Positions 1,562 to 61,172 of a stretch of DNA of 64,000 nucleotides are shown here, one piece after another. Position 1 is the stretch's first letter. The number at the start of each line of letters is the position of its first letter. A model generated the notes under the pieces. That model saw nothing but the letters and a program-made list of their open reading frames with translations, was not told the DNA's origin and searched no databases. The translations under genes and the position numbers were made by a program. The stretch is taken from the IMG/VR virus record IMGVR_UViG_3300017917_000952, positions 62,001-126,000 of that record; one strand, written 5' to 3'.

Positions 1562-2398
1562 ATGGCTGACCATTATCAAACACTCGGCGTAGACCGAACT
1601 GCCTCACAAGATGATATCAAAAAAGCGTTCCGCAAACTTGCGGCACAGCATCATCCTGACCGCGGCGGGGACACGGCCAAATTTCAAGAAATACAGGCTG
1701 CGTATGCTACACTTAGCGATCCAGAAAAACGGGCGCAGTACGACAACCCTACTCCACAATTTGAAGGCTTCCGACAATATGGCGGTATGCCTCCCGGGTT
1801 TGAAGATGTTATAAATCAAATGTTTGGAGGTAATCATCCGTTTAATGATATTTTTGGAAGACCGCATCCGACTCAACCTAAAAACAGAATATTAAACATC
1901 CAGACTACAATTACATTGGAAGAAGCATTCTCTGGTAAGGAGATGGTGGCGAACATCACTCTGCCCAGCGGCCGTGATCAAATTTTACAAATTAAAATTC
2001 CTGCCGGTATACAAGACGGTACCGTTCTACGTCTATCAGGTATGGGGGATGACAGTGTTAAGAATGCCCCACGAGGTGACATACATCTAACTGTTAGCAT
2101 ACAGCCTCATAAAATATTTCATAGAACAGGCGATGATCTAAATTGCACAATGAACTTAAACTGCATCGATGCAATGACTGGTAAAACTATCCAGATAGAA
2201 ACTGTAGATAAGAAAACACTCGAAGTTGCTGTTAAGGCCGGAACACAACACGGACAAATAATGAGTGCTGCCGGCTATGGTATGCCTAAGATGTCGGACA
2301 ATAGATTTCGGGGACGATTACTAATTCATATCAATATCGTAATCCCAGACAATCTGTCAGACGCACAAAAGCAGATACTCAAAGAACATTTTCAGTAA
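1562..2398 (+). CDS. dnaJ: DnaJ/CbpA-type co-chaperone (J domain plus C-terminal domain, no Zn finger)
   Basis: DHYQTLGV...AFRKLAAQHHPDRGG; G/F-rich linker; GDIHL and GRLLIHINIVIP C-terminal motifs. Confidence 0.92.
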   Translation: MADHYQTLGVDRTASQDDIKKAFRKLAAQHHPDRGGDTAKFQEIQAAYATLSDPEKRAQYDNPTPQFEGFRQYGGMPPGFEDVINQMFGGNHPFNDIFGRPHPTQPKNRILNIQTTITLEEAFSGKEMVANITLPSGRDQILQIKIPAGIQDGTVLRLSGMGDDSVKNAPRGDIHLTVSIQPHKIFHRTGDDLNCTMNLNCIDAMTGKTIQIETVDKKTLEVAVKAGTQHGQIMSAAGYGMPKMSDNRFRGRLLIHINIVIPDNLSDAQKQILKEHFQ

Positions 2399-2401
2399 AT
2401 A
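2395..2401 (+). promoter_or_regulatory. T4-late-like promoter motif GTAAATA
   Basis: Upstream of def, overlapping dnaJ stop. Confidence 0.4.
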
Positions 2402-2406
2402 CTTTT

Positions 2407-2901
2407 ATGAAGCAAGTTTTAAAATTTCCAAATGAATTACTTAGGGTTCAGGCTCCAGAATGGGATTTTGGTAATCCTCCTGTCGATCCTGCGACCTTAG
2501 AAAAAGAACTAATTGAAACCATGTTAGCCCACGACGGTATCGGGTTGGCAGCAACGCAGGTAGGATTGCTATATCGTGTATTTGTTATGGGATGGAGAGG
2601 CGCACCTGAAGAAGCAAAAGCATTTTTTAACCCCATAGTTGTTGCAACCGTAGACGAGGTTGAAGACCTCGAAGAAGGATGTTTGAGTTTTCCTGGAATA
2701 TATGTTAACATTAAACGTCCTAAAAAAATTCTTGCTAGATGGCAAAACTCAAAAGGAGAATGGGAAGAATCTGAATTCGAAGGATATAACTGTAAGTGCT
2801 TTCTACATGAACTAGATCATCTAGAAGGAATCGTTTTTCAAGACCGCGTAAGTTCCCTAAAGTGGGCCTTGGGCGTTAAAAAATCAAAAAAGAGGAAATA
2901 A
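2407..2901 (+). CDS. def: Peptide deformylase
   Basis: GIGLAATQVG, EGCLSFPG, HELDHLEG. Confidence 0.95.
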   Translation: MKQVLKFPNELLRVQAPEWDFGNPPVDPATLEKELIETMLAHDGIGLAATQVGLLYRVFVMGWRGAPEEAKAFFNPIVVATVDEVEDLEEGCLSFPGIYVNIKRPKKILARWQNSKGEWEESEFEGYNCKCFLHELDHLEGIVFQDRVSSLKWALGVKKSKKRK

Positions 2902-2907
2902 AACCAA

Positions 2908-5178
2908 ATGTTGGAACCGGATAAAGACTTAGAGAAAATTTTTGAACATGCTGTTCAACTAGCAAGTATGAACAAACACGAATACGTTACGCTAGAACAT
3001 TTTCTTTTTAGCATGTTAAGTAACGAACCGTTCGTGAAAGTATTAGAGGCATTTGGTACAGATGTAAAAACCTTTAGAGAAGACATCGAAAACTACATTG
3101 TCAACGAACTAAAAGACATTGCTAGTGAAACTGTTACTCGCCCTAAGAAAACAGTAAGTGTAGATCGAATGTTGAATCGTGCATTTACGCAGGTTCTGTT
3201 TAGCGGTCGTCAAATTATTAGCCCTGTTGACTGCTTTATTAGCCTATTCGGCGAAAAGAAAAGCCAGGCAAACTATTTCATAAGGAAAGCCAATATTGAT
3301 AAAGATATTTTCATCGACTTTATCAAGAAAGAAGTCTCTAAGAACGAAGAGGTAGAAGAAACCAAAGGTAGCAATCCTCAGATCGAAAGAATGTTGCTAC
3401 AGTTCTGCACTAACTTGAGCGCAAAGGCTAAGAGTAAAAAAATTGATCCGGTTATCGGTCGTGATAAAGAAATTGAAGAAATTCAATTAGTGCTTGCACG
3501 CCGTACAAAATCAAATGCTATTATGATCGGAGATCCCGGAGTAGGTAAGACCGCTATTGCAGAAGGTCTTGCTCGTAAGATCTACGAAGGCAATGTTCCT
3601 AAGTTTATTCAAGAGCACACAGTTTATAGTCTAGATATCAGCGGTATGCTAGCCGGTAGTAAATACCGCGGTGATTTTGAAGAACGCCTCAAGGCCGTTA
3701 TTAGTGCATTAGAGAAAAAAGGCAAGTGCATCTTGTTTATCGACGAAGCACATATGATGAATGGTGCAGGCGCTGCCGGTAACAGTAGCAATGATATGGC
3801 TAATATGCTCAAGAGCACACTAGGCAAAGGCACAATTAAGGTAATTGCTTCAACTACTTGGGACGAATATCGTAAACACTTCGAAAAAGATCGTGCGCTA
3901 ATGCGCCGATTCCAGCGTGTGGTAATTGACGAGCCCGATGAAGTAACTGCTATTAAGATTATTAAAGGTCTTAAGAAGTATTACGAAAAACATCACAGCG
4001 TTAAGATTACAAATCAAGCAGTTATTGATAGTGTCAAGTATAGTGTTAAGTATCTCAGTGATAAGAAATTACCTGACAAGGCTATCGACCTAATTGATTG
4101 TGCAAGTGCTCGCTTTAAACTTCGCAATGAAGAAGGCGGTATTGTTGACCACGATGAAATTCTATTCGAAGTTAGTCGTATTGCTAACATTCCGATTGAA
4201 GCCATTAACAGCAAAGAAACAAGTAACTTGCCTAATCTTGAAAAGAACATGAAGGCCAAGGTGTTTGGTCAAGAAACTGCTATTGATAATCTGTTAGACA
4301 AAGTGTTTATTGCACAGGCTGGCCTAAAAAATCCCAATAAGCCTGTAGGTAACTTCTTGTTTGTTGGCCCAACTGGTGTCGGTAAAACAGAAGCGGCAAA
4401 ACAACTAGCACAGAACCTAGGTATCAAATTAGTTCGCTTTGATATGAGTGAATATCAAGAACAGCATAGTGTTGCTAAATTCATCGGTGCGCCTCCAGGC
4501 TATGTAGGCTACGAGGATAACGCAGGATTGCTGATCACAAGTCTACAAGAAACACCAAACTGTGTGCTGTTGTTAGACGAAGTTGAAAAAGCACACCCAA
4601 GTGTGTTAACCGTTCTCCTACAAGTTATGGATAACGGCTTTGTTACAGGCAGCAATGGTAAGAAAGCAGATGCTCGCAATGCAATTATCATTATGACTTC
4701 TAACCTTGGTGCTGCCGATGCTGAAAAGAATGCAGTCGGTTTTGGTAGCCTAGAACGTGATAGCGATCCTAAAGATGCAATCAATAGGTTCTTTGCACCG
4801 GAATTCCGAAATCGTTTAGACGGTATCATTAGATTTGGCAAACTCGATCAGCAGACAATGATCAAGGTGGTGAAGAAATTTGTTGATGAACTTAATGCTC
4901 AGATTAAGGACAAAAATATTCATGTCAAACCAACTGTTGAAGCAGTTGAGTACTTGATCGAAAAAGGCTTTGATAGTAAAATGGGAGCTCGTCCGCTACA
5001 GAGATGCATTGATGAGATGATCAAGCGTCCCCTAAGTAAAGAGATTCTGTTTGGTAAACTATCAAATGGAGGCATTGTAGAAATCACAGTTGAAGATAAA
5101 TCTCTTAAACTCAATGTAGTAGACATTATGCCTATTAAAAAGAGCGAAGATGAAATTCAGGAAACTGACAACGCATAA
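2908..5178 (+). CDS. clpA: ClpA-type Clp protease ATP-binding subunit
   Basis: Clp N-domain (TLEHFL), two AAA+ modules (GDPGVGKT/FIDEAH; GPTGVGKT/LLDEVEKAH), no coiled-coil M domain, VGF ClpP-docking loop, MGARPL. Confidence 0.93.
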   Translation: MLEPDKDLEKIFEHAVQLASMNKHEYVTLEHFLFSMLSNEPFVKVLEAFGTDVKTFREDIENYIVNELKDIASETVTRPKKTVSVDRMLNRAFTQVLFSGRQIISPVDCFISLFGEKKSQANYFIRKANIDKDIFIDFIKKEVSKNEEVEETKGSNPQIERMLLQFCTNLSAKAKSKKIDPVIGRDKEIEEIQLVLARRTKSNAIMIGDPGVGKTAIAEGLARKIYEGNVPKFIQEHTVYSLDISGMLAGSKYRGDFEERLKAVISALEKKGKCILFIDEAHMMNGAGAAGNSSNDMANMLKSTLGKGTIKVIASTTWDEYRKHFEKDRALMRRFQRVVIDEPDEVTAIKIIKGLKKYYEKHHSVKITNQAVIDSVKYSVKYLSDKKLPDKAIDLIDCASARFKLRNEEGGIVDHDEILFEVSRIANIPIEAINSKETSNLPNLEKNMKAKVFGQETAIDNLLDKVFIAQAGLKNPNKPVGNFLFVGPTGVGKTEAAKQLAQNLGIKLVRFDMSEYQEQHSVAKFIGAPPGYVGYEDNAGLLITSLQETPNCVLLLDEVEKAHPSVLTVLLQVMDNGFVTGSNGKKADARNAIIIMTSNLGAADAEKNAVGFGSLERDSDPKDAINRFFAPEFRNRLDGIIRFGKLDQQTMIKVVKKFVDELNAQIKDKNIHVKPTVEAVEYLIEKGFDSKMGARPLQRCIDEMIKRPLSKEILFGKLSNGGIVEITVEDKSLKLNVVDIMPIKKSEDEIQETDNA

Positions 5179-5845
5179 GTTATTCTACGGAAAGTGGACA
5201 TATAAGATTCGATGCTACTGCAAAGGATCTTATATGATCGCACGCCTAGGCATTCCTTATGCTTTAAACGAGTGCATGACGAAAAAAGCAGGCGGAATAT
5301 TTCGTAGAGACTTCGAGCCAGATAAACTTATAGAGTTTATCCAAGACGTAGACCAATTCTTAGATAAAGATATTAAGGTACGAACTGAAGGTGGTATTTT
5401 TACAATCTATTGTAACGACGAAAAGTTGTTTGACAAAATGACTAAGCGTTTAGAACGCTGGATCACTGAAGTACATGTACCCGGAAATGCCGCAGAGCAG
5501 GCATTTATCGAAGAAAACGGTCGTAGAAAGATGATCTGCAATCGACTACCGTTCGAACGCTATCAATACAAAGTCTACATCAAAGAACGACTCGATATTC
5601 AAACTAGAGAACGTCTTTGGTCATGGATGGCAAAGTATGACGGAAAGTTTAGAACTCCGGTTAGGGTAGCCACTTGGCTAATGGGCCAAAAACAATGGGT
5701 AACTTGTCCTAGTATCTACGTAGAAGACGGTCCTAGTTTAAGTATGATGCTGTTATTTTTAGGCGATAGGGTATCTAAAGTAGAAGAATTTGTACCAAGG
5801 TCTGTGATAAATATCATATCAGAGGAACAGCCATGCCCAGTTTAG
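5150..5845 (+). CDS. Hypothetical protein
   Basis: 231-aa ORF in operon context, overlapping clpA end. Confidence 0.7.
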   Translation: MKFRKLTTHKLFYGKWTYKIRCYCKGSYMIARLGIPYALNECMTKKAGGIFRRDFEPDKLIEFIQDVDQFLDKDIKVRTEGGIFTIYCNDEKLFDKMTKRLERWITEVHVPGNAAEQAFIEENGRRKMICNRLPFERYQYKVYIKERLDIQTRERLWSWMAKYDGKFRTPVRVATWLMGQKQWVTCPSIYVEDGPSLSMMLLFLGDRVSKVEEFVPRSVINIISEEQPCPV

Positions 5846-6249
5846 CCCAAGGATTAGAATTCGTTACTTATACCAATACAGCAAGTGTACAGGTAACTTA
5901 CCCGCTTTTTACAAGTACCAATGAAACATTGGTCTATAAAAGCATTCCTGCTAAGGGCGATGGCTATTTCGGTAACAGCGACGGCTTGCATACTGTAATG
6001 TACACCTATGATAGCAATTTCATCGGCACTATTACAATGCAGGCTAGCCTGGCAACTAATCCCGTTGAAGCAGATTGGTTTGATGTTGCCGGAACTACCG
6101 AGGAACAAACAGAAACTAGTCCCTTTTATAACGGACTTACTGTTGCAACACAGTCAAAATACTATAACTTTACTGGCAACTTCGTCTGGGTACGAGGTGT
6201 TGTTTCCATCGAAGCAGGCCAAGTAGATAGTATTCTCTACAATCACTAA
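5833..6249 (+). CDS. Hypothetical beta-rich protein, possibly virion-associated
   Basis: 138-aa ORF preceded by ATAAATA late-type motif (5807-5813) and AGAGGA SD. Confidence 0.65.
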   Translation: MPSLAQGLEFVTYTNTASVQVTYPLFTSTNETLVYKSIPAKGDGYFGNSDGLHTVMYTYDSNFIGTITMQASLATNPVEADWFDVAGTTEEQTETSPFYNGLTVATQSKYYNFTGNFVWVRGVVSIEAGQVDSILYNH

Positions 6250-6275
6250 TTTTCCAAAAGAATAAAATATAATAA

Positions 6276-6295
6276 ATACTCTATACTTAGAGTAT
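6276..6295 (+). promoter_or_regulatory. 8-bp hairpin overlapping late-promoter motif ATAAATA (6272-6278)
   Basis: ATACTCTA-TACT-TAGAGTAT. Confidence 0.45.
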
Positions 6296-6318: not shown

Positions 6319-6687
6319 ATGCTACTTAACGAATTCTTCGGAAAAAATATAGACCCTATCAAGAATATGAACAAAGGTCGCGATGATAAAAACATCAGCG
6401 ACGACCTTTTTAACTATATTATTGATCACGATAAACTGCACAAAGATTATTTCTTCCCTATTGCTGCAAAAATTAGTAAGAAAAAGGGAGATGTAGACCG
6501 TAAAGAAATGTGCAAAGAATTCCTGCCTATGGTCTTAAAAGGCTGCAAAGAATATTACGAGCACAAAAAGATGAAGGGCAAATTAGGAACAGTGTTTTCT
6601 AAAGAATTGCGTAGCGATATGTGCGAGCGACTACTAGATCATTATAAAGATGATATTGTTAGAGGCAAATATAAGGTAGGTGCATAA
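6319..6687 (+). CDS. Hypothetical protein with MxxxEF leader
   Basis: ORF track 6298-6687; likely start MLLNEFFG at 6319. Confidence 0.7.
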   Translation: MLLNEFFGKNIDPIKNMNKGRDDKNISDDLFNYIIDHDKLHKDYFFPIAAKISKKKGDVDRKEMCKEFLPMVLKGCKEYYEHKKMKGKLGTVFSKELRSDMCERLLDHYKDDIVRGKYKVGA

Positions 6688-6688
6688 T

Positions 6689-9600
6689 ATGATCCTGAGA
6701 GAATTTTTTAAACGTACACTGTTAGAAGGTGGTAACTTAGAGATCGATGGCGCACAAGCACAACAGATCGAACTCAAGGTACATAATAGAGCATACATTG
6801 TACCTATCCTAAACACATTGTTAAATGCAATCAACGACGGCTTTCAACAAAGCCAGGGCGGGCCTCTATGGAGTGCAAAGGTATTAAAGAGTCGCAAGTA
6901 TCTTAGCGGGTCTAGCCTACACTTCTTCAATACAGATATCCCTGATGCAGAATTTGAGCGTGTAAAACCTAAAGTAGGTGACATCGACACGCAGATTAAT
7001 AAAGATGCAGAACCTCAATTAGCACAATGGTTGAATAGTGTTAAGGGGCAAGTTGTAGGAAATGCTACATTCCTAGGCTATAGTAGAGGCAACGAGCAAT
7101 ATAGCAGTCTATGGGAACTAACAGATCCTCCTATTAAAGTACAAATCGACTTTGAATTCGTTGACTATACAGAAAAAGATGAACCATCTGACTGGGCAGG
7201 CTTCAGTCACAGCAGTAGTTGGGACGACCTAAGCCAGGGTATCAAGGGTGTATTCCATAAGTTCTTAATTCAGGCATTTACAAAACTAACAACTCAAGAA
7301 TTCTTACTACGTAAAATGGTAGGTCGAGGAAAGGCTCGTGCCGAACAAGATGTTCCTACTACCGATAACATGTTCTCCTTTGCTGTTAGCAGTAAAGAGG
7401 GCGGTGGTCTACGTCCAAAATATGAGCCAGTAACAGACGAAAAAGGAAGGCCCCTTGTAGTTGACGGGCTTCCGGTCATGCGAGCACTTCCTGCAAGTGG
7501 ATACGAAAAAGATATTGGAAAAATTTTCCAAAGCGTATTTGGTAATAAAGTAAACGGCGCTGCACTAAAGAAGGTTCTTCCGAAGACATGGAGTTTCACC
7601 GGGCTATTAGATATCATGAACATGGTATTATCTCCCGAAGAGAAAGAACAAGTGTTCGACGGATTTATCGATAAACTGTTTGCTCCAGGCGCCCAGGGCC
7701 TATACAAAGGCGACCCTCAAAGAGATATGACTGAAAAGAATGCCGCAGTCAACTATGCACTTAAGGTATTAGGTATAACTCCTCCTAAGAACCTTGAGCA
7801 GATGCGTCAAGAGTATCTTAAAAATTATAAAGTAGCATCTGAAGGTGCTATGGGATTAGACCGCCCAGTTACAGAAGCAGACGAACCAGCAGTCAAGGCG
7901 CAACTGCGTAAAGGTATGCCTCACCTTCGTGATCTTAAACCTGCAGACTTCTTAGATTTAGTAGACGAACTACGTTCAGAAGGCGGTCGCTTTAAGTTAC
8001 AGAACATCCCTCTTAATGTTAAAGTCGACGGCTTTGGTGGAAGATTTGGTAAGGATTCGCAGGGTAGACCTTTTATGGGAACCAGCAGAACTGAACCAAA
8101 ATACAAAGCAGGGTTCTTAGATTATCATAAAGAAAAGGGAACTACTGATCCCGAAATCTTAGGTCGTGCGGCTAATTTCGACAAGTTATTTGAAGAAATG
8201 ATGAATGCGATTAAGATCGTAGACAGTAAATTAGGCCCAGACTTTTTGACAGACAAACAAGTAACCTGTGAAGTGTTGTTCTTGCCGTTCGCTACCCAAA
8301 CTGAAGAAGGCAAATTAAAATTTGTAGGTATCGAATACGATCAATTACCACAGGGTGTTGATCTTGTGCTAGTACCATATCGTATTGTAGAAGCAAGCAC
8401 TGGTAAAGATTTACCCGACGAGGCTGCACAACAACTTGCCAATCTTGGACAGCACGGTAGTGTTATGTTCATGAGCAATAGACTTATTCAGAAAGACGGG
8501 TTAGATGTTACTGAAATTATCAACCCGTTAGACAATTTAGAAGAACTAAAGAAAATTGTTAGCGACACTGCCGGCAAGAGAGACCGAGCTAGTTTAGAAC
8601 TTCGTAGGGAAGTTGAAGCAAAATTAAAACCAGTGCAGATCGCTCTAGAAAAAGCAATCGATGAAGATCCTAACATCATTGGCAAGGACAAACTAGGACA
8701 AGATTACGAAGGCATTGTTATTAACAGTCGACTAGGTCCTATCAAGGTCACCAGTCAACGACAAAAAGATATTATTGCACAGAAAAATGCTGCCAAGGCC
8801 GCAGCTCGTGCAGACGCCGGAAGAACTAACACCAACAAAACTGCTGTGGTTGCCATTGGAAGTTTCGTAGGCCACAAAGGTCACGAAGAACTCTGGGATT
8901 ATACTGTAAAGAAAGCGGCCGAATTGGGCGGAGATCCATATTTGTTTATGGGCAATGCTGTCGGCAAAGATGATCCTATTCCAGTTGATGTTAAACTACA
9001 GACCTGGCATAAGATGTATCCCAAGTATGCTAAAAACATTAGTGGCACAATGGCAGGTGGTACACTGATGCAAAAGATCAAACACGAGTTGATCAATCCG
9101 TTACCAGGTAAGCCTCCTCGCTATGATAATATTGTTATCATGGTTGGCGAGGATCAGGCCGGTATGAATATTGCACAAGCACTGATGAAGGCCGTTAATA
9201 AGTTTCCGGGCTATGAGCATGTTAAAGTTAGCCTAGAGCCAACACCTCGTGGTACAGGTATGAGCTTTACCAAACTACGCAACGTGTTAAAAGATCCAAA
9301 CGCTACGCCAGAACAGCAATATGCCTTATGGAGCCAAGGGTTCGACGAAGCAAAATTAGGCAAAGACTGGATTTTACACTTAATGGACATTACGAGAAAA
9401 GGTATGGGTATTACACAAAAACCAACACAGCCAGCGGCGCCTGTTCCGGTAGCAGAAACAAGACTATTCAATGCACTAGTTCGACCTTCGTTGAATGAAG
9501 ACCACAGTACAGTCGGTGGATGGGGTAAGGGTGCATACGATACCTACTCGGGCACCAGACACGGTAGGGGTGTAGCAGAAATGGACAAGAGTCAACCCAG

Positions 9601-10630
9601 CCACGGTCGTGATGGCAAGATTAGCCACAGCACCTACGGTTCAAGAGACAAAGGCGGTTCTACAGGACCTGATCGAACCGCTAAAGCAACTACGGCTGAC
9701 AAGATGATGAAACACGCTCATGACGTTATGATGAAGTCGATGAGCGATGCTGACAAGGTGAAAAAGGGATGGCGCAATCCTAACATGAAAGAGCAAGGTA
9801 TCGAAGAATACGGTGATACTGCCAAGGGTCAGAAGATGTTGACTAAAGTCCAGAAACGTGCTGTAGATAGAGTAGTATCTAAGAAAGCAGATACTGATCC
9901 AGCATACGCAAAAAAGAATAAAGCCACTGCTGACCGTGCTTGGGATAGAATGAAAGACAAGGATCTGGCAGAAGGCTGGAAAGAAAAAGTCGGAGCCGCC
10001 GCATTAGCAGGAGCAGTGGCTACAGGTGCCGGTGCTAATACTCCAAAGGTTCCACTCGACAAGGCAATTCAACAGGCAACTGCGGTATATAACATAAACA
10101 AGGCTGTTAAAAAACATAAAGAAAAAGAAGCCGAGAAGCGTAAGGCGGGCGAGAAAGAAGTTAAAGAGTCCGATAGTCCAGCAATGGCACAAACTGCTCG
10201 TCGCTTAACAGATCCTAAAGACGGTGCTGTTGCAAAACTACGTGCTGCTGGAGATAAGCGTAGAGAAGATCAATTAAAGAGTAGAGATATTGCCAAGAAG
10301 AACGAAGCAATGCTACCTAAGAGTGCTTTTTCTGGCAGCGACAAAAACAAATTAGGTTCAGCAGGACAATGGAAGAACACAGGCCCTAGTAAGAACCGCC
10401 CAGCAAGAGCAGGCGACCTAGTAGGTGGTGCTGAAGAAAGTATTGAGAAAGAAGAAAAGCAACGCCTAGATCCTAAGTGCTGGAAAGGCTATCGTAAAGC
10501 AGGCACTAAGATGAAGGGCGGTGTTCGAGTAAACAACTGCGTTCCAGTTAGCGAAGATGTTGAAAACATTTTTGCCGCTCTTATCGATAAGATTATCGTA
10601 AATGAAGCAATACAAAATAACAAGCGCTGA
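6689..10630 (+). CDS. Large multidomain protein: Pol-beta-type NTase + ligase-like adenylation domain + HxGH cytidylyltransferase-like domain + modular C-terminal tail
   Basis: SGSS...GDID...QID; KVDG...CEVL...EGIVI...IKV; GHKGH...MVGED...MSFTKLR; start MILREFF at 6689 after SD AAGGTAGG. Confidence 0.7.
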   Translation: MILREFFKRTLLEGGNLEIDGAQAQQIELKVHNRAYIVPILNTLLNAINDGFQQSQGGPLWSAKVLKSRKYLSGSSLHFFNTDIPDAEFERVKPKVGDIDTQINKDAEPQLAQWLNSVKGQVVGNATFLGYSRGNEQYSSLWELTDPPIKVQIDFEFVDYTEKDEPSDWAGFSHSSSWDDLSQGIKGVFHKFLIQAFTKLTTQEFLLRKMVGRGKARAEQDVPTTDNMFSFAVSSKEGGGLRPKYEPVTDEKGRPLVVDGLPVMRALPASGYEKDIGKIFQSVFGNKVNGAALKKVLPKTWSFTGLLDIMNMVLSPEEKEQVFDGFIDKLFAPGAQGLYKGDPQRDMTEKNAAVNYALKVLGITPPKNLEQMRQEYLKNYKVASEGAMGLDRPVTEADEPAVKAQLRKGMPHLRDLKPADFLDLVDELRSEGGRFKLQNIPLNVKVDGFGGRFGKDSQGRPFMGTSRTEPKYKAGFLDYHKEKGTTDPEILGRAANFDKLFEEMMNAIKIVDSKLGPDFLTDKQVTCEVLFLPFATQTEEGKLKFVGIEYDQLPQGVDLVLVPYRIVEASTGKDLPDEAAQQLANLGQHGSVMFMSNRLIQKDGLDVTEIINPLDNLEELKKIVSDTAGKRDRASLELRREVEAKLKPVQIALEKAIDEDPNIIGKDKLGQDYEGIVINSRLGPIKVTSQRQKDIIAQKNAAKAAARADAGRTNTNKTAVVAIGSFVGHKGHEELWDYTVKKAAELGGDPYLFMGNAVGKDDPIPVDVKLQTWHKMYPKYAKNISGTMAGGTLMQKIKHELINPLPGKPPRYDNIVIMVGEDQAGMNIAQALMKAVNKFPGYEHVKVSLEPTPRGTGMSFTKLRNVLKDPNATPEQQYALWSQGFDEAKLGKDWILHLMDITRKGMGITQKPTQPAAPVPVAETRLFNALVRPSLNEDHSTVGGWGKGAYDTYSGTRHGRGVAEMDKSQPSHGRDGKISHSTYGSRDKGGSTGPDRTAKATTADKMMKHAHDVMMKSMSDADKVKKGWRNPNMKEQGIEEYGDTAKGQKMLTKVQKRAVDRVVSKKADTDPAYAKKNKATADRAWDRMKDKDLAEGWKEKVGAAALAGAVATGAGANTPKVPLDKAIQQATAVYNINKAVKKHKEKEAEKRKAGEKEVKESDSPAMAQTARRLTDPKDGAVAKLRAAGDKRREDQLKSRDIAKKNEAMLPKSAFSGSDKNKLGSAGQWKNTGPSKNRPARAGDLVGGAEESIEKEEKQRLDPKCWKGYRKAGTKMKGGVRVNNCVPVSEDVENIFAALIDKIIVNEAIQNNKR

Positions 10631-10865
10631 TCTAAATCCAAAGCAAGATGACGATTGTTATCTTGCACCGGATGACCCTATACACGATCTAATGCCTGCT
10701 AGTATGATGGGCGGGCTAGGCAGTATGGAAGCACTTGCTAATTATAAAGCAACTATGCGACAGCCTAATTTAGGTAGCAACAAGGGACAAATACAGCGAG
10801 AACAGGGCATAAAGCCCGGAACCGAAGCGTGGTTTAAACTTTGGTTTGGAAAAGATAATAAATAA
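10602..10865 (+). CDS. Hypothetical protein
   Basis: 87-aa ORF, ends GIKPGTEAWFKLWF. Confidence 0.65.
   Translation: MKQYKITSADLNPKQDDDCYLAPDDPIHDLMPASMMGGLGSMEALANYKATMRQPNLGSNKGQIQREQGIKPGTEAWFKLWFGKDNK
10858..10864 (+). promoter_or_regulatory. T4-late-like promoter motif ATAAATA
   Basis: Upstream of dps. Confidence 0.45.
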
Positions 10866-10871
10866 CGTATC

Positions 10872-11318
10872 ATGGAACAGTTACAACAACTTGCTAAGAT
10901 TGCATTTGCTAGTGAATTTAGTTTTGCACTAAAGGCACAGAATTTTCATTGGAACGTAGAAGGTAGCGATTTCTTCGAGTACCACGCACTATTTGAAAAA
11001 ATTTATGACGAAGTTTATGGAGTTATCGACGACTTTGCAGAAAACATTCGTAAATTAAAGACCTATACACCCGCAAGTCTAAGTCGATTCAGTATGCTAT
11101 CAAGGATTGACGATGAAACTGAAATCATTCCACTTGAAGCGATGGTAAAAGAATTACTTGTAGATAACGAGCGTATGATTGTTATCTTAAAGAAAACCTA
11201 CGATGCTGCTGAGGCTGCTGGCAAGCACGGATTTAGCAATTTCTTAGCAGAGCGCATGGATGCACACGAAAAACACGGTTGGATGTTACGTGCAAGTAGC
11301 AAGGGCGGAATACAATGA
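10872..11318 (+). CDS. dps: Dps/ferritin-like DNA-protecting protein
   Basis: NFHWNVEG..F.EYHALFEKIY...IDDFAENIR; C-terminal HEKHGWML. Confidence 0.88.
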   Translation: MEQLQQLAKIAFASEFSFALKAQNFHWNVEGSDFFEYHALFEKIYDEVYGVIDDFAENIRKLKTYTPASLSRFSMLSRIDDETEIIPLEAMVKELLVDNERMIVILKKTYDAAEAAGKHGFSNFLAERMDAHEKHGWMLRASSKGGIQ

Positions 11319-11692
11319 GAGCAACTGAGTTTGTTACAGAATCACATCGTGTAATCGGCGGCGTCAAAAAACGTCAAGCGGCCGTTCAGAAAAGTGTTCA
11401 AAAGTCAAGAGATAAAGGCGGTTATGATAGAACTGCACATATGAATAGACTATGGATGGCTACTGCCATGGCCGACGGCAAGAGTCAAAAACCCGTAGAC
11501 ATGGACGCCTACAGTTGGATCGAAAAATATAATACGCAACATCCGTATACCGAAGAAGAATACAATATGTTCCGTCAGGCAGAAGCAACAGTTCCTACAG
11601 ATAGCAAAAATGTTATTTCTTGGAGTAAAAGCGAAGAGCCAAAAGATACTTATACAACAAGTCCTGTAAGTAATTGGATGAACAAAAAATGA
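11315..11692 (+). CDS. Hypothetical protein with MRATEF leader (probable head-internal protein)
   Basis: 125-aa ORF, MRATEFVTES start. Confidence 0.65.
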   Translation: MRATEFVTESHRVIGGVKKRQAAVQKSVQKSRDKGGYDRTAHMNRLWMATAMADGKSQKPVDMDAYSWIEKYNTQHPYTEEEYNMFRQAEATVPTDSKNVISWSKSEEPKDTYTTSPVSNWMNKK

Positions 11693-13119
11693 CAAACGAA
11701 TTCAAAGTAAAAAAATATAAAGACGCAACTGTCTATACTTTAGAAAGTGCATCTGCTGGTGCTACTGGTGCAGGCGCAATTGCAACAGCATCGAGCAGTA
11801 TCGGAGGCGTTCGTCGTAGAGATAATCTAATTGCCCAAGAGAGCGATACTATTAAAGTACCAGTTACACAAAAGCCTCGCCAAGGACCTTTGCGTCCTCA
11901 AACTGGTGCTGGACAACATCGTGACAAAAAGAAAGAACAAAAGCAAGGCAAAGAAAAGCATCGTAAACCATACATGGAAGAATTAAAAACTCGCCTAGCC
12001 GCTTTAAAAAATAAACTAGGCGAAAACAGCGAGCTTGCACAACAGATGATGGCTCTTGCAAGGTCTAGAGGAATGAATCCTCGAATTGCCGGTACTCCGG
12101 AACAAGAGCGCGAACGCACACAACAAATGATGGCGCAACGTGCAAAAGATAGAGAAGAAAAAGATCGACAATCTGCAAGCGATGATGCTGCTAAATTACC
12201 AGAACTAAAAGCAGAATACGATGCACTGTTTAAAAAGTATAATAGTCTAGGTGGCAGAAACTGGCAGTATGCCGACCGTGAGCAGAATTTGTCAGATAGC
12301 GAACGTGAAGCACGTAGCATAGAGCCAAAATTAAATCAATTGGCTGGTAGAATTGCTCGTGCAGAAAAATCACAAGGTGTAGCAGAAGGCGCAGAGTTCG
12401 GTGCTTACTATAGCGAACAAGTTGCACAACAAATTTTTAACAAGCGTCAGGATATCACATCTGAAGACGAAGTATTGAATCAAGCATACCACATTGTGGC
12501 CGACGAGCAAGGACAAAGACGTGCTCGTTATATGTTTAACTACGATGAAGACTTCCCAAGTGATGTTGTATCTAATTACTTCCATTTACAGAAGCAAGGT
12601 GTAGCAGAAGGTGATGCATATTTTACACATTTAGAAAACATGCTCAACGAAGATTGGCAAAAAGTTAATCGTCGAGATAAGACAGATGGCATGAGCCGAA
12701 AGGCAGTTAAGGCCTACCGTCGAGAGAATCCCGGTAGCAAATTAAAGACCGCTGTAACTACAAAGCCTAGCAAACTAAAGAAAGGAGGCAAGGCTGCAAA
12801 GCGCCGCAAGAGTTTCTGTGCTCGCATGAAGGGCATGAAGAAAGCCCATGCCAGTGCTAAGACTAAGCGCAACCCGGATAGTCCAATTAATAAGGCCTTA
12901 CGCCGTTGGAACTGCGAGGAAGATGCATACATGAACAGTCTAAACCAACAGGTCCTTGAGAAATTAAATCCTCAAGCAGATGTAGACGTATGGGTGCAGG
13001 ATTTTCAAAAAGCAGATCCTAACAAGTACAAACAATTTAAAAATAAAACTCCTCAGAAAAAAGCGCAGATGGCGGTAGCAGCACACTATGCCGCTAACGA
13101 ACCAAGTAAGAAAAAATGA
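11689..13119 (+). CDS. Modular protein with QGVAEG repeats and a basic RRKSFCARM...ALRRWNC module
   Basis: ORF track 11674-13119; probable start MTNEFK at 11689; repeated QGVAEG. Confidence 0.7.
   Translation: MTNEFKVKKYKDATVYTLESASAGATGAGAIATASSSIGGVRRRDNLIAQESDTIKVPVTQKPRQGPLRPQTGAGQHRDKKKEQKQGKEKHRKPYMEELKTRLAALKNKLGENSELAQQMMALARSRGMNPRIAGTPEQERERTQQMMAQRAKDREEKDRQSASDDAAKLPELKAEYDALFKKYNSLGGRNWQYADREQNLSDSEREARSIEPKLNQLAGRIARAEKSQGVAEGAEFGAYYSEQVAQQIFNKRQDITSEDEVLNQAYHIVADEQGQRRARYMFNYDEDFPSDVVSNYFHLQKQGVAEGDAYFTHLENMLNEDWQKVNRRDKTDGMSRKAVKAYRRENPGSKLKTAVTTKPSKLKKGGKAAKRRKSFCARMKGMKKAHASAKTKRNPDSPINKALRRWNCEEDAYMNSLNQQVLEKLNPQADVDVWVQDFQKADPNKYKQFKNKTPQKKAQMAVAAHYAANEPSKKK
12373..12611 (+). 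repeat. 17-nt direct repeat CAAGGTGTAGCAGAAGG flanking an in-frame 222-nt module
   Basis: Copies at 12373-12389 and 12595-12611; 12-nt core GGTGTAGCAGAA also at 9569-9580. Confidence 0.8.
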
Positions 13120-13622
13120 GATTCGTTGAGTTCAAAGCAAGCGATTATGAAATACATGATCGTCCGAAACTGGATAAGATCTTGCTAGAACTCTGTCACC
13201 ATATTTTGGAAGGTCAGCGTATTGATTCAAACAAATACGGGATGGTTGCGGCCTGTGTCTTAGACCCCGAAAACCGCAAAGTCTACGGTGTTAACGAGGC
13301 GGCCGGAGACAATAAAAGACGCCACGCAGAACGTGTGGCCATAGATAGATATGAGGAAAACTATGGCCAAGTACCAAAAGGCAGTATTATCATTACAACC
13401 CTAAGTCCTTGTAATGAAGACCATACTGAAATGGCCGATGGTAGATACGGTGAGAGTTGTACAGATCTAGTAAACTCGTCAAACTGTCGCAAGGTCTATT
13501 GCGGATATATAGATCCAACGCAGCACAACGACCACGAAGAATATACCTTAGAAGAAACACAAGAAGGTAAAATCAAAGAACTCTGCAAACGATTCGCAGA
13601 CACTTTTCTGAACGCAAAATAA
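13116..13622 (+). CDS. Zn-dependent cytidine/dCMP deaminase-fold protein
   Basis: HAE...TLSPC-x15-C...VYCG; 'GMVAACVLD' first strand. Confidence 0.8.
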   Translation: MRFVEFKASDYEIHDRPKLDKILLELCHHILEGQRIDSNKYGMVAACVLDPENRKVYGVNEAAGDNKRRHAERVAIDRYEENYGQVPKGSIIITTLSPCNEDHTEMADGRYGESCTDLVNSSNCRKVYCGYIDPTQHNDHEEYTLEETQEGKIKELCKRFADTFLNAK

Positions 13623-13623
13623 T

Positions 13624-13652
13624 TTGACTTCAACACTTGCGTACTATATACT
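13624..13652 (+). promoter_or_regulatory. sigma70-like promoter
   Basis: TTGACT-N17-TATACT, then AAGGAGA SD. Confidence 0.75.
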
Positions 13653-60254: not shown

Positions 60255-61172
60255 ATGACTTTAGGAACTACAATAAGAAAAGCCAAATACCTAAACAACA
60301 GAGACCTGCTAGCAGAAATTCATAGGAGCAAATGCTCCTTTTCAAGTTTTACTAAGCCAGAATACAGTACATACGATATTATTCTACCAAGCACAGATAA
60401 AGTTAATCAACGCACTCTTGCCGATGCCAGAAGAAATAAAGCAAAACGTATAGGCTTGCAAGCATTTACTGAAGCAAGACTCTCAGGCGATAAAAAGGTA
60501 AAACTAGCAGACTTAACTCCGGATTATAAGTCTATACCTAAGACAGATGTTATTATCAGAATAATGACATTTGATCATATTCCCCTTGCTCCGGGCCGTA
60601 AAAAGACTACCAAGACTACAGCAGATAGTCACGAAAAGGTAAATTTTCCTCCTTTCCAACACTGGAAACTAGACGAAGAAACTGAAGAACTAGTCTGTGT
60701 AGGTAAAAGTCATTGGAAGGGCCCTGTTGATAAAGGACAGTTCAGCAAAGACCACGGACGCATTACTGAAAACTTAGGTAAGATGTTTATCAAACTAAGT
60801 GAACGCTATGCACAGAGAAGCAACTGGCGTGGATACACCTATGTAGATGAGATGAAGGGACAGGCTATTTTACAGTTAAGTCAGATCGGTCTTCAATTTG
60901 ACGAGTCTAAATCAGAGAATCCATTTGCTTATTACACAGCCGCAGTCACTAATAGTTTTACTAGGATTCTAAATCTAGAGAAGAAAAATCAAAACATTCG
61001 TGACGATTTACTCGAAGAAAACGGCCTAACTCCAAGTCTTACTAGACAAAACCAGCACGAATACGCCGAAGAAACAGCACGCCAGGCAGAACTATACAAG
61101 AACATGCGTATGCCAAAAAGCGAAGAAGTTGATATTGAAGAAGAGTTTGAGGATGAAGGAACTGAGGCTTGA
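60255..61172 (+). CDS. gp55: Late-transcription sigma factor (T4 gp55-like) with internal/N-terminal extension
   Basis: YLNNRDLL.EI; NWRGYTYVDEM..QAI...LQFDESKSENPFAYYT....NSF.RI...EKK. Confidence 0.82.
   Translation: MTLGTTIRKAKYLNNRDLLAEIHRSKCSFSSFTKPEYSTYDIILPSTDKVNQRTLADARRNKAKRIGLQAFTEARLSGDKKVKLADLTPDYKSIPKTDVIIRIMTFDHIPLAPGRKKTTKTTADSHEKVNFPPFQHWKLDEETEELVCVGKSHWKGPVDKGQFSKDHGRITENLGKMFIKLSERYAQRSNWRGYTYVDEMKGQAILQLSQIGLQFDESKSENPFAYYTAAVTNSFTRILNLEKKNQNIRDDLLEENGLTPSLTRQNQHEYAEETARQAELYKNMRMPKSEEVDIEEEFEDEGTEA

What the first reader, a model, noticed from the sequence alone, without database searches (positions are those of the whole stretch)
6319..13622. Shared MxxxEF N-terminal leader on four clustered genes, including enzymes (capsid-targeting signal candidate)
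Seen: MLLNEFF (6319), MILREFF (6689), MRATEFV (11315) and MRFVEFK (13116), plus MTNEFK (11689). Known: T4 internal proteins use a short N-terminal capsid-targeting sequence removed after Glu. Inference: these proteins, including the deaminase and the triple NTase, are packaged and injected with the DNA to act before transcription starts.
Basis: partly seen in the sequence, partly recalled or inferred. Interest (0 to 1): 0.65.

Follow-up and report, generated by a model that had tools for sequence, protein, structure and literature searches.

The report
Capsid-targeting leaders on jumbo-phage proteins
Five unrelated proteins in one gene cluster of an uncultured freshwater T4-like jumbo phage start with the same short peptide, which looks like phage T4's signal for loading proteins into the head, so sequence alone may reveal which proteins this phage injects.

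Summary
Six of 240 genes in the 206.7-kb record start M-x(2,3)-E-F, against 1.2 expected, and five of them lie within seven consecutive genes (P about 3.5e-6).

The sixth is an 82-aa gene between the portal and a T4 gp21-type prohead protease, where T4 has core protein gp67. All 56 distinct orthologues keep M-x-L-x-E-F through synonymous codon changes.

In 25 related loci, 77 distinct proteins carry the leader (consensus M-R/K-L/A-R/K-E-F/L-I/F-x-E). It matches the T4 leader MKTYQEFIAE in register, one residue shorter.

In 18 of 18 relatives of the 1313-aa protein the leader ends L/I-x-E directly before an invariant GGN. Cultured-phage homologues start M-GGN.

A T4-like late-promoter motif precedes the cluster, and a gp55-like late sigma factor is encoded.

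The cargo claims hold: Pol-beta-type nucleotidyltransferase, RNA-ligase-like and PPAT/NMNAT-like domains in one protein, plus a zinc deaminase.

Packaging, cleavage and injection are inferred, not shown. Only two of the five window leaders have a clear cleavage site.

Verdict: a new member of the known T4 head-targeting system.

The parts
6273..6278 (+). TAAATA core of a T4-type late-promoter-like motif (AATAAATA at 6271-6278), 46 nt before the first leader gene
   Evidence: Read directly. The motif occurs 42 times in sense and 0 times in antisense orientation in 9.1 kb of intergenic DNA of the genome. It is conserved upstream of the orthologous gene in 9 of 11 distinct relatives.
6319..6687 (+). 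122-aa basic protein (pI 9.1) of unknown function. Leader MLLNEFF (6319-6339). No L/I-x-E site next to the leader.
   Evidence: No Pfam, PHROG or NCBIfam family. Eleven distinct orthologues all carry the leader, and some read MR(L/I)xELLE|G.
6689..6727 (+). 13-aa leader MILREFFKRTLLE of the 1313-aa protein. Predicted protease cut after Glu13.
   Evidence: L/I-x-E directly before an invariant GGN in 18 of 18 distinct relatives, with leaders of 5-18 aa. Homologues in Vibrio phage pv27 and Xanthomonas phage X1 start M-GGN. AlphaFold2 pLDDT is below 50 for residues 1-14.
6728..7873 (+). Domain 1 of the 1313-aa protein: Pol-beta-superfamily nucleotidyltransferase fold
   Evidence: Invariant G97-D98-x-D100 and D154/E156. 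Model pLDDT 86. Top structural matches are almost all Pol-beta-fold enzymes: Pol mu/beta, TENT2, TUT7, OAS, CD-NTases, Z 6-8. PHROG 19290.
7883..8812 (+). Domain 2: ATP-dependent RNA-ligase-like (covalent nucleotidyltransferase)
   Evidence: Invariant K445-x-D447-G448 and E674-G675. Foldseek matches to Trl1 ligase, archaeal and Naegleria RNA ligases and T4 Rnl2, E 9e-6 to 1e-3.
8831..9403 (+). Domain 3: HIGH-motif adenylyltransferase fold (PPAT / NMNAT / NadD-like)
   Evidence: Invariant G724-S-x-x-G-H729-x-G-H732 and G-x-G-x-S-x-T-x-x-R at 855-864. Foldseek matches to PPAT and NMNAT, target TM-score 0.5-0.69.
9404..10630 (+). Basic, low-complexity C-terminal tail of the 1313-aa protein (pI 9.8), ending in a small two-Cys module
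   Evidence: PHROG 4359 matches residues 1255-1290. This part varies in length among relatives.
10602..10865 (+). 87-aa conserved gene without the leader
   Evidence: orthologues start MKQY(K/R)ITS.
10872..11318 (+). Dps/ferritin-like protein without the leader
   Evidence: Pfam PF00210, E 7e-19. PHROG 3636.
11315..11692 (+). 125-aa basic protein (pI 9.3) of unknown function. Leader MRATEFVTE (11315-11341). Predicted cut after Glu9.
   Evidence: Eight of eight orthologues keep [I/V]-x-E at positions 7-9 while the residues after it vary.
11689..13119 (+). 476-aa basic protein (pI 9.8). Leader MTNEFK. After ..YTLE19 comes a Ser/Ala/Gly/Thr-rich stretch that looks like the predicted mature N-terminus of the major capsid protein. 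DUF6321 domain at 12673-12909.
   Evidence: Pfam PF19846, E 6e-10. The capsid-protein resemblance is visual only for this protein. It is significant for a relative's 80-aa leader protein.
13116..13622 (+). 168-aa cytidine-deaminase-fold zinc deaminase (pI 5.4). Leader MRFVEF (13116-13133). No canonical cleavage site next to the leader.
   Evidence: Pfam PF00383, E 6e-11, above the cut-off, domain from about residue 19. HAE and PC..C motifs align to a RibD deaminase structure. Four of five orthologues keep M-R-(L/F)-x-E-F.
13624..13652 (+). Sigma-70-like promoter (TTGACT, 17 nt, TATACT) directly after the deaminase stop. It marks the end of the leader-gene unit.
1562..5178 (+). Conserved upstream neighbours: DnaJ (1562-2398), peptide deformylase (2407-2901), ClpA-like AAA+ unfoldase (2908-5178)
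   Evidence: The same order is seen in the relatives.
5833..6249 (+). 138-aa homologue of a phage virion structural protein, just upstream of the cluster
   Evidence: PHROG 14467 'virion structural protein', E 7.5e-12.
60255..61172 (+). Gene with a T4 gp55-like (late sigma factor) region
   Evidence: T4 gp55 residues 37-116 match at E 3.9e-7, 36% identity. ORF coordinates.

Best explanation
The shared N-terminus is a T4-type capsid-targeting propeptide.

Proposed mechanism:
1. The cluster at window 6319-13622 is transcribed late from a T4-like promoter.
2. The 6-19-residue leader (hydrophobic-x-Glu-hydrophobic-hydrophobic, often followed by x-Glu) docks each protein onto the scaffolding core while the prohead assembles.
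3. The gp21-type prohead protease then cuts after Glu of an L/I/V-x-E site where one is present: after Glu13 of the 1313-aa enzyme and after Glu9 of the 125-aa protein.
4. The mature proteins stay in the head with the DNA and are probably ejected into the next host.

The cargo set varies between related phages. In the window it includes a roughly 150-kDa fusion of a Pol-beta-type nucleotidyltransferase, an RNA-ligase-like domain and a PPAT/NMNAT-like adenylyltransferase, a zinc deaminase, and three basic proteins of unknown function.

Shown here: the motif and its enrichment, its modular nature, the junction site, the protease, the head-module copy, and the promoter motif. Inferred: docking to the scaffold, cleavage, retention, injection and any counter-defence role.
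For: 1. Enrichment and clustering: 6 of 240 genes against 1.2 expected, and 5 of them within 7 consecutive genes, P = 3.5e-6.

2. The leader is a module.
- The five mature proteins are unrelated to each other.
- 77 distinct leader proteins were found in 25 related loci. They fall into 17 BLAST families with varied domains: P-loop kinase, NT5C nucleotidase, GH19, PG_binding_1, DUF6267, deaminase, DUF6321.
- The same DUF6321 domain, 85% identical, sits in a Prochlorococcus phage protein without the leader.

3. The genome encodes a Peptidase_S77/gp21-type prohead protease (E 2.6e-27, above the cut-off; PHROG 207). It lies in a module ordered portal, 82-aa gene, 348-aa gene, protease, scaffold-like gene, major capsid protein, like T4 genes 20-67-68-21-22-23.

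4. The 82-aa gene at the gp67 position starts MILREF. All 56 distinct orthologues start M-x-L-x-E-F. Leu3 uses six codons, Glu5 uses GAA or GAG (41/15) and Phe6 uses TTC or TTT (30/26), so selection acts on the peptide.

5. Register match to T4, read from the T4 record: IPII/IPIII start MKTYQEFIAE|A and gp24 starts MAKINELLRE|S. This clade has MRAKEFIxE| and MKINELLVE|. In T4, residues 4 and 7 serve targeting and residues 8 and 10 serve processing, and gp21 cuts after L/I-x-E (PMC9026906).

6. L/I-x-E sits directly before an invariant GGN in 18 of 18 relatives of the big enzyme, although the leader varies from 5 to 18 aa. Leaderless cultured-phage homologues start M-GGN. AlphaFold2 leaves residues 1-14 outside the fold.

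7. [L/I/V]-x-E ends at position 8-9 in 34 of 77 leader proteins, against 11% of other proteins having such a site by position 10. The residue after it is mostly G, S or A.

8. The scaffold-like protein has the highest L/I-x-E density in the genome, 4.7 per 100 aa against a mean of 1.0. This fits a protease that keeps T4's specificity.

9. The predicted capsid-protein cut (..YLAE|SATSGATSAGNIAT, P3 Leu and P1 Glu invariant in 38 distinct relatives) is copied behind the leader of a relative's 80-aa protein: 16 of 23 identical, E 1e-5.

10. Late expression is likely.
- TAAATA occurs 42 times in sense and 0 times in antisense orientation in intergenic DNA, mostly before structural-looking genes.
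- It precedes the cluster here and in 9 of 11 relatives.
- It sits 11 nt before three scattered leader genes of a complete relative.
- A gp55-like late sigma factor is encoded, and a sigma-70-like promoter starts the next unit.

11. Four of the five leader proteins are basic (pI 9.1-9.8, genome median 6.0), as the T4 internal proteins are described in PMC9026906.
Against: - There is no virion proteome and no culture. Packaging, cleavage and ejection are all inferred.
- Three of the five window leaders (6319, 11689, 13116) have no L/I-x-E next to the leader, and 21 of 77 leader proteins have none within 25 residues.
- The deaminase is acidic and has four internal L/I-x-E motifs in 168 aa.
- The cargo enzymes are of kinds that normally work in the cytoplasm (nucleotide and RNA metabolism).
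- The cluster lies beside replication and chaperone genes, not in the structural module.
- Two genes inside the cluster (Dps-like, 87 aa) lack the leader.
- A 150-kDa multidomain protein would have to unfold to pass through the tail.
- The late-promoter reading rests on a motif, not on RNA data; no RNA run holds this DNA.
- The leader-scaffold docking test could not be run.
Confidence: 0.68

Rival explanations
1. The leader does take the proteins into the prohead core, but they act only in assembly (core or scaffold accessories like T4 gp67 and gp68). They are degraded or expelled at maturation, so nothing functional is injected.
For: The best-conserved carrier is the 82-aa gene at the gp67 position. 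T4 gp67 and gp68 are cut to pieces and leave the head (PMC9026906). The deaminase has four internal L/I-x-E motifs.
Against: The mature parts of the 1313-aa, 125-aa and 476-aa proteins have fewer L/I-x-E motifs than the genome average, 0-0.8 against 1.0 per 100 aa. Catalytic residues of all three enzyme domains and of the deaminase are invariant or intact. Relatives attach the leader to GH19 and peptidoglycan-binding proteins, which make sense only at host entry.
Confidence: 0.12
2. The leader is an address for another phage system, not the capsid. It could be recognised by the neighbouring ClpA-like unfoldase, DnaJ or peptide deformylase for controlled turnover, or it could assemble a cytoplasmic nucleotide/RNA-metabolism complex.
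For: DnaJ, deformylase and ClpA lie directly upstream in all close relatives. Many cargo domains are nucleotide or RNA enzymes: deaminase, NT5C, P-loop kinase, nucleotidyltransferases, RNA ligase. Iyer et al. (PMC7824862) already speculated that jumbo-phage ClpA could act as a translocase or in virion assembly.
Against: This does not explain the same leader on the head-module gene, the match to the T4 propeptides, the invariant L/I-x-E junction, the copy of the capsid-protein cleavage context, or the late-promoter motif. ClpA adaptors are not known to read such N-termini (my own knowledge, not tested here).
Confidence: 0.1
3. The shared start is a nucleic-acid-level feature with no targeting role: a translation-initiation or downstream-box element, or a recombination scar left by shuffling of gene cassettes.
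For: Several leader genes have weak or no Shine-Dalgarno sequences, and some late promoters sit 10-14 nt from the ATG, so the first codons could matter for initiation. Shared 5' ends could promote cassette exchange, as I recall being proposed for the variable internal-protein loci of the T-even phages (from memory, no paper read for this).
Against: Conserved residues are encoded by many synonymous codons: six for Leu3, and both codons for Glu5 and Phe6. Conservation follows amino-acid class rather than bases. Other late genes lack the motif.
Confidence: 0.07
4. Chance, or ordinary N-terminal composition.
For: The motif is short and was defined after the fact.
Against: Enrichment, clustering and conservation across dozens of diverged relatives.
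Confidence: 0.01

Closest known systems
Phage T4 internal proteins IPI, IPII, IPIII and their capsid-targeting sequence (CTS)
   Same: A short N-terminal leader is shared by otherwise unrelated, mostly basic proteins. The core E-F-I-x-E is in the same register. The leader ends in a gp21-type L/I-x-E site. A gp21-type protease is present. The genes sit outside the structural module. The gene set varies between related phages (PMC9026906, PMC3012670).
   Different: The leader is one residue shorter before the Glu. The position matching T4 Tyr4 is Leu, Ala or Ile. The distance from leader to cut varies from 5 to 19 aa. Some carriers have no visible cut site. The cargo includes large multidomain enzymes rather than small inhibitor proteins.
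T4 gp24 propeptide (MAKINELLRE|S) and T4 Alt (cut at ITE-6)
   Same: gp24's ten-residue propeptide nearly equals MKINELLVE| on a 235-aa protein of this genome (genome 128755). Alt shows that a T4-type head can carry and inject an enzyme behind a very short propeptide (PMC5694885).
   Different: The 235-aa protein matched no Pfam or PHROG family, capsid-protein families included. No ADP-ribosyltransferase was found among the cargo examined.
Variable internal-protein loci of the T-even phages
   Same: Conserved flanks and a conserved leader surround a changing set of cargo genes. Reviews describe the T-even internal proteins as diverse and sharing only the CTS (PMC3012670, PMC9026906).
   Different: This is a distant, uncultured lineage of about 350 kb. 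A complete relative has about 11 leader genes in at least five places.
Ejection proteins of giant phages phiKZ and SPN3US
   Same: Many enzymes (for example the virion RNA polymerase) are loaded into the head through N-terminal propeptides that a gp21-related protease cuts after Glu (PMC5694885).
   Different: Those propeptides are mostly longer than 100 residues and are cut after S/A/G-x-E or A-x-E. Here the leaders are 6-19 residues with L/I/V at P3, as in T4.
Encapsulin cargo-loading peptides
   Same: Functional analogy only: a short terminal peptide directs unrelated enzymes into an HK97-fold shell (my own knowledge).
   Different: Those peptides are usually C-terminal, bind the shell protein itself and are not cleaved. 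No encapsulin is involved here.

Membership tests
T4-type CTS-directed, gp21-processed internal head proteins | Short N-terminal leader shared by proteins that are otherwise unrelated | tested here: met
   Five window proteins share it with no mutual similarity. 77 distinct carriers in 17 BLAST families were found in relatives.
T4-type CTS-directed, gp21-processed internal head proteins | Leader pattern comparable to the T4 CTS (hydrophobic-x-E-F/L-hydrophobic-x-E) | tested here: met
   The family consensus M-R/K-L/A/I-R/K-E-F/L-I/F/L-x-E compares with T4 MKTYQEFIAE and MAKINELLRE. In the window the full pattern is present only in 11315. The other four have the M-x-x-x-E-F part.
T4-type CTS-directed, gp21-processed internal head proteins | Cleavage site L/I-x-E at the end of the leader | tested here: inconclusive
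   Met for 6689 (LLE13; 18 of 18 relatives). Nearly met for 11315 (VTE9; [I/V]-x-E in 8 of 8 orthologues). Not met for 6319, 11689 (TLE19, Thr at P3) and 13116.
T4-type CTS-directed, gp21-processed internal head proteins | gp21-type prohead protease encoded by the same phage | tested here: met
   PF03420 at E 2.6e-27, above the cut-off. PHROG 207 at E 2.7e-60. The gene lies outside the window, at genome 136085-136717.
T4-type CTS-directed, gp21-processed internal head proteins | Link to the prohead core: a core protein of the head module carries the same signal | tested here: met
   The 82-aa gene between portal and protease starts MILREF, and 56 of 56 distinct orthologues start M-x-L-x-E-F.
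T4-type CTS-directed, gp21-processed internal head proteins | Late expression | tested here: inconclusive
   A T4-like TAAATA motif precedes the cluster and scattered leader genes, and a gp55-like sigma factor is present. No RNA data exist.
T4-type CTS-directed, gp21-processed internal head proteins | Protein present in purified virions with the leader removed | not testable with these tools
   The phage is uncultured and no proteome is at hand.
T4-type CTS-directed, gp21-processed internal head proteins | Leader sufficient to package a foreign protein | not testable with these tools
   Needs a fusion experiment.
Pol-beta-superfamily nucleotidyltransferase (1313-aa protein, residues 14-395) | G-[S/D]-x-D motif plus a third carboxylate on the Pol-beta fold | tested here: met
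   Invariant G97, D98, D100 and D154/E156. Nearly all top matches are Pol-beta-fold enzymes, at a middling Z of 6-8. No Pfam hit.
ATP-dependent RNA/DNA ligase superfamily (residues about 399-708) | Motif I K-x-D-G lysine, motif IV E-G, and the adenylyltransferase fold | tested here: met
   Invariant K445, D447, G448, E674 and G675. Foldseek matches to RNA ligases at E 9e-6 to 1e-3, probability 1.0. Activity not tested.
HIGH-motif nucleotidylyltransferases, PPAT/NMNAT type (residues about 715-905) | H-x-G-H and I-S-x-T-x-x-R-like motifs on a Rossmann-like fold | tested here: met
   Invariant H729, G731, H732 and G855..T861..R864. PPAT and NMNAT matches with target TM-score 0.5-0.69.
Cytidine/dCMP deaminase zinc-binding family (13116-13622) | H-A-E and P-C-x-x-C zinc and catalytic motifs; Pfam PF00383 | tested here: met
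   PF00383 scores 42.5 bits against a cut-off of 25. HAE is present. The two Cys residues are 16 residues apart instead of 2. Substrate unknown.
phiKZ-type long-propeptide ejection proteins | Propeptides longer than 100 residues, cut after S/A/G-x-E | tested here: not met
   The leaders are 6-19 residues with L/I/V at P3.

The most novel reading that the evidence does not exclude
An abundant freshwater jumbo-phage lineage pre-loads its head with a changeable enzyme kit and injects it as ready-made counter-defence, for example to repair cleaved tRNA or to alter nucleotide pools or signals. Every item is addressed by the same 6-19-residue leader. The kit includes a 150-kDa fusion of terminal-transferase-type, RNA-ligase-like and adenylyltransferase domains and a deaminase. 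Relatives add a P-loop kinase, a 5'-nucleotidase and a GH19 wall hydrolase. The always-adjacent ClpA-like unfoldase, DnaJ and deformylase would help to load or unfold such large cargo.
Probability: 0.22. Interest if true: 0.8.

Novelty: new member of a known kind. Interest (0 to 1): 0.55.

Why it matters
If the leader is a head-targeting signal, the set of injected proteins of a whole uncultured phage lineage can be read from sequence. The lineage is common: more than 600 related contigs are in IMG/VR, from ponds, lakes, estuaries and wastewater. The signal marks about 11 genes in a complete 355-kb relative.

It would extend the T4 capsid-targeting system well beyond the T-even phages. It would also show large RNA- and nucleotide-modifying enzymes as packaged cargo, and so point to candidate counter-defence proteins.

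The junction rule (leader, then L/I-x-E, then domain) gives precise peptides to look for in viral metaproteomes. The short leader could also be tried as a portable packaging tag.

Tried and rejected
- Megablast of the cluster against cultured phages found no match.
- tblastn of the 82-aa head protein against cultured phages found no match.
- Pfam, PHROG and NCBIfam gave nothing for the 122-aa and 125-aa proteins, and no Pfam or NCBIfam family for the 1313-aa protein.
- Sequence search of the three enzyme segments against PDB chains gave nothing useful. Fold searches on AlphaFold2 models were needed instead.
- The protein atlas look-up for the 125-aa protein gave only a sub-threshold lead (S-AdoMet lyase cluster, score 0.85). 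I do not rely on it.
- The strict T4 late promoter TATAAATA occurs only 10 times and is not general in this genome. The shorter core TAAATA is the strand-specific motif.
- BLASTP of the capsid protein against the 476-aa protein did not report the visually similar Ser/Ala/Gly/Thr stretch. That resemblance is claimed only for the relative's 80-aa protein.
- No RNA sequencing run holds this DNA. Read laying was therefore not used, since contigs cannot show transcript starts.
- Single-linkage clustering lumped 44 carrier proteins into one 'family' through shared C-terminal modules in relatives. I rejected this as evidence of paralogy for the window genes.
- The large protein searches were not used, because family scans and locus searches were enough.

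Full report
WHAT THE WINDOW IS. The window is bases 62,001-126,000 of a 206,751-bp IMG/VR virus record that CheckV rates 58% complete. Its family-B DNA polymerase is 51% identical to that of Sinorhizobium jumbo phage Phosso and 43-46% identical to other 350-490-kb phages of the T4 superfamily. Near-complete relatives in IMG/VR are 328-355 kb. The DNA occurs in pond, freshwater, estuary and wastewater metagenomes. No cultured phage matches it at the DNA level.

CHECK OF THE OBSERVATION. The genes are tightly packed: 1 nt between 6687 and 6689, and ATGA overlaps at 11315, 11689 and 13116. In a greedy gene call of the whole record (240 genes, 96% coverage), six genes start M-x(2,3)-E-F against 1.2 expected from composition (P = 0.0016). 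Only 4 of 1268 internal Met residues are followed by the motif. Five of the six lie within seven consecutive genes (permutation P = 3.5e-6). Their mature parts show no mutual BLASTP similarity. They have different domain content: none found, three enzyme domains, none found, DUF6321, and a deaminase.

THE SIXTH COPY IS THE KEY. The sixth copy starts MILREFIYF. It is an 82-aa gene at genome 134641-134889, outside the window. It lies between the portal gene (PHROG 213, E 2e-113) and a 348-aa acidic gene. After these come a gp21-type prohead protease (Pfam PF03420 above its cut-off, PHROG 207, E 3e-60), a 362-aa scaffold-like protein and the major capsid protein (PHROG 138). This is the order of T4 genes 20-67-68-21-22-23, and T4 gp67 is 80 aa. 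In 80 related head modules fetched with the protease, all 56 distinct orthologues of the 82-aa gene begin M-x-L-x-E-F. Leu3 is written with six different codons, Glu5 with GAA or GAG (41/15) and Phe6 with TTC or TTT (30/26). The peptide is conserved, not the DNA.

RELATIVES OF THE CLUSTER. Twenty-five IMG/VR loci encode relatives of the 1313-aa protein at 42-82% identity. In them the flanks are stable: DnaJ, peptide deformylase, ClpA-like, two small genes, then the cluster, then a Dps-like gene, an 89-aa gene and the DNA polymerase. The genes between the flanks change in number and kind, and most of them begin with the leader. Pooling these loci with the genome gives 84 distinct proteins with Glu at position 5 followed by a hydrophobic residue; a tighter leader pattern leaves 77. 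Their consensus is M, R/K/L/I, L/A/I, R/K/N, E, F/L/I, F/I/L, x, E. The carriers include a P-loop kinase (AAA_33), an NT5C 5'-nucleotidase, a GH19 hydrolase, a peptidoglycan-binding protein, DUF6267, DUF6321, deaminases and many small proteins with no family. A complete 354,680-bp relative has about 11 such genes in at least five places.

COMPARISON WITH T4, USING THE T4 RECORD ITSELF. IPII and IPIII begin MKTYQEFIAE|A, IPI begins MKTFKEF...ITE|A, and gp24 begins MAKINELLRE|S. The reviews state four relevant facts:
- The first ten residues of IPIII suffice for packaging.
- Residues 4 and 7 matter for targeting, and residues 8 and 10 for processing.
- gp21 cuts after L/I-x-E.
- Alt is cut at ITE-6 (PMC9026906, PMC5694885, PMC3012670).

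The clade consensus MRAKEFIxE| has the same spacing (hydrophobic, x, E, F, I, x, E) with one residue fewer before it. A 235-aa protein of this genome starts MKINELLVE|, almost the same as the gp24 propeptide.

THE JUNCTION. In all 18 distinct relatives of the big enzyme the leader ends L/I-x-E and is followed at once by an invariant G-G-N. The leader itself varies from 5 to 18 residues and is otherwise free to change. Homologues of the first domain in Vibrio phage pv27 and Xanthomonas phage X1 begin M-G-G-N, so they lack the leader exactly up to the predicted cut. AlphaFold2 folds residues 15-382 with confidence (mean pLDDT 86, pTM 0.83) and leaves residues 1-14 below pLDDT 50.

The 125-aa family keeps [I/V]-x-E at positions 7-9 in 8 of 8 orthologues. 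Overall, [L/I/V]-x-E ends at position 8 or 9 in 34 of 77 carriers, while only 11% of other proteins have such a site by position 10. The next residue is G, S or A in 37 of the 56 carriers that have a site within 25 residues.

The protease probably keeps T4's taste. The scaffold-like protein has 17 L/I-x-E motifs, the highest density in the genome (4.7 per 100 aa against 1.0). The capsid protein has an invariant L-x-E|[S/A] 41 residues in, at the place homologous to the T4 gp23 cut. One relative's 80-aa carrier copies that capsid-protein context right after its leader (16 of 23 identical, E 1e-5). For the window's 476-aa protein the similar stretch is only a visual resemblance.

TIMING. A TAAATA core, the last six bases of T4's late promoter TATAAATA, occurs 42 times in the sense direction and never in antisense in 9.1 kb of intergenic DNA. 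By comparison there are 110 copies on both strands of the whole genome. Most intergenic copies precede structural-looking genes. One copy lies at window 6273-6278, 46 nt before the first leader gene. It is kept in 9 of 11 distinct relatives amid otherwise diverged sequence. Three scattered leader genes of the complete relative each have it 11 nt before the ATG. A gp55-like late sigma factor is encoded at window 60255-61172. No convincing terminator interrupts 6319-13622, and a sigma-70-like promoter begins right after the deaminase stop. The cluster therefore looks like one late unit, but there are no RNA data.

THE CARGO.
- Domain 1 has invariant G-D-x-D plus D/E residues. Its structural neighbours are nearly all Pol-beta-fold enzymes, at middling scores (Z 6-8).
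- Domain 2 has the invariant ligase motif K-x-D-G and E-G. It matches RNA ligases: Trl1, archaeal and Naegleria ligases, T4 Rnl2.
- Domain 3 has H-x-G-H and an ISxTxxR-like motif. It matches PPAT and NMNAT.
- A 400-residue basic tail follows.

In Xanthomonas phage X1 the homologous region is split into adjacent separate genes, one of them annotated as an adenylyltransferase/cytidyltransferase, so the window protein looks like a fusion. The deaminase passes the Pfam cut-off and has HAE and two Cys ligands with unusual spacing. The enzymes' substrates are unknown. A kinase, a nucleotidase and a ligase together recall RNA-repair kits such as T4 Pnk with Rnl1, but that is an analogy from general knowledge, not a result.

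WHAT REMAINS OPEN.
- Nothing here shows that any of these proteins is in a virion, is cut, or enters a host.
- Three of the five window leaders lack a canonical cut site. T4 work shows that targeting can occur without processing (PMC9026906), so this weakens 'removed after Glu' more than it weakens 'targeted'.
- The deaminase is the least convincing cargo: it is acidic and has four internal L/I-x-E motifs.
- The constant neighbourhood of ClpA-like, DnaJ and deformylase genes is unexplained. It supports a rival in which the leader addresses a chaperone system. It could equally mean that these proteins help to load large cargo.

PROCEDURE NOTES. No other genetic code was used. Read laying was not used.

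Noticed in passing
genome-wide; for example G000 genes at 139895, 170167 and 173991 (outside the window); L124:8376, L124:15181, L125:2481: The late-promoter-like TAAATA often lies only 10-14 nt before the start codon. Many late mRNAs of this lineage may therefore be leaderless or nearly so, which would be unusual for a T4-type phage.
   Followed up: partly
window 6280-6295: Right after the TAAATA upstream of 6319 there is a small hairpin (CTCTA tact TAGAG). Relatives keep a hairpin at this place with different sequences (CTCT aaccgc AGAG; AGACGCA gt GCGTCT). This suggests a conserved structure at the 5' end of the transcript.
   Followed up: no
window 1562-5178: DnaJ, peptide deformylase and a full-length ClpA-like unfoldase (TIGR02639, E 3e-265) lie directly upstream of the leader cluster in the window, and genes with matching N-termini and lengths lie in the same order in the relatives that share this side of the locus. 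The reason is unknown.
   Followed up: partly
window 12673-12909: The DUF6321 part of the 476-aa protein is 85% identical to part of a Prochlorococcus phage P-TIM68 protein. That protein lies next to the large terminase gene and has no leader. This is very high identity for such distant phages, so the domain looks mobile.
   Followed up: partly
L040:775-1476 (Synechococcus phage MA01): A 233-aa cyanophage protein next to the small terminase gene starts MKTYQELMEV, almost the T4 CTS. T4-style leaders may therefore be widespread in the family Kyanoviridae too.
   Followed up: no
L002:6013-9362 (Xanthomonas phage X1): The region homologous to the window's 1313-aa protein is split here into adjacent separate genes, one annotated as an adenylyltransferase/cytidyltransferase. 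The module is older than the fusion and than the leader.
   Followed up: partly
window 10450-10530 (residues about 1255-1290 of the 1313-aa protein); L027:10287-10889: A small two-Cys module (C-W-K-G-Y ... N-C, PHROG 4359) ends the big protein and recurs in other leader proteins of relatives. It and DUF6321 act as shuffled C-terminal modules.
   Followed up: no
L034:2755-3462 (genome 128755-129462): A 235-aa Ala/Pro-rich protein starts MKINELLVE, nearly the T4 gp24 propeptide. It lies in the late region near the portal gene and is a further candidate head protein.
   Followed up: no
L034:9025-10071 (genome 135025-136071): The 348-aa gene between the 82-aa gene and the protease is half poly-acidic repeats and half Gly/Ser/Lys-rich. 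The acidic half recalls the acidic run of T4 gp67. It matches no family.
   Followed up: no
IMG/VR relatives (L042-L121): More than 600 contigs encode a relative of this protease, and the 80 best kept are 82-98% identical. This uncultured jumbo-phage lineage is very common in freshwater data.
   Followed up: no
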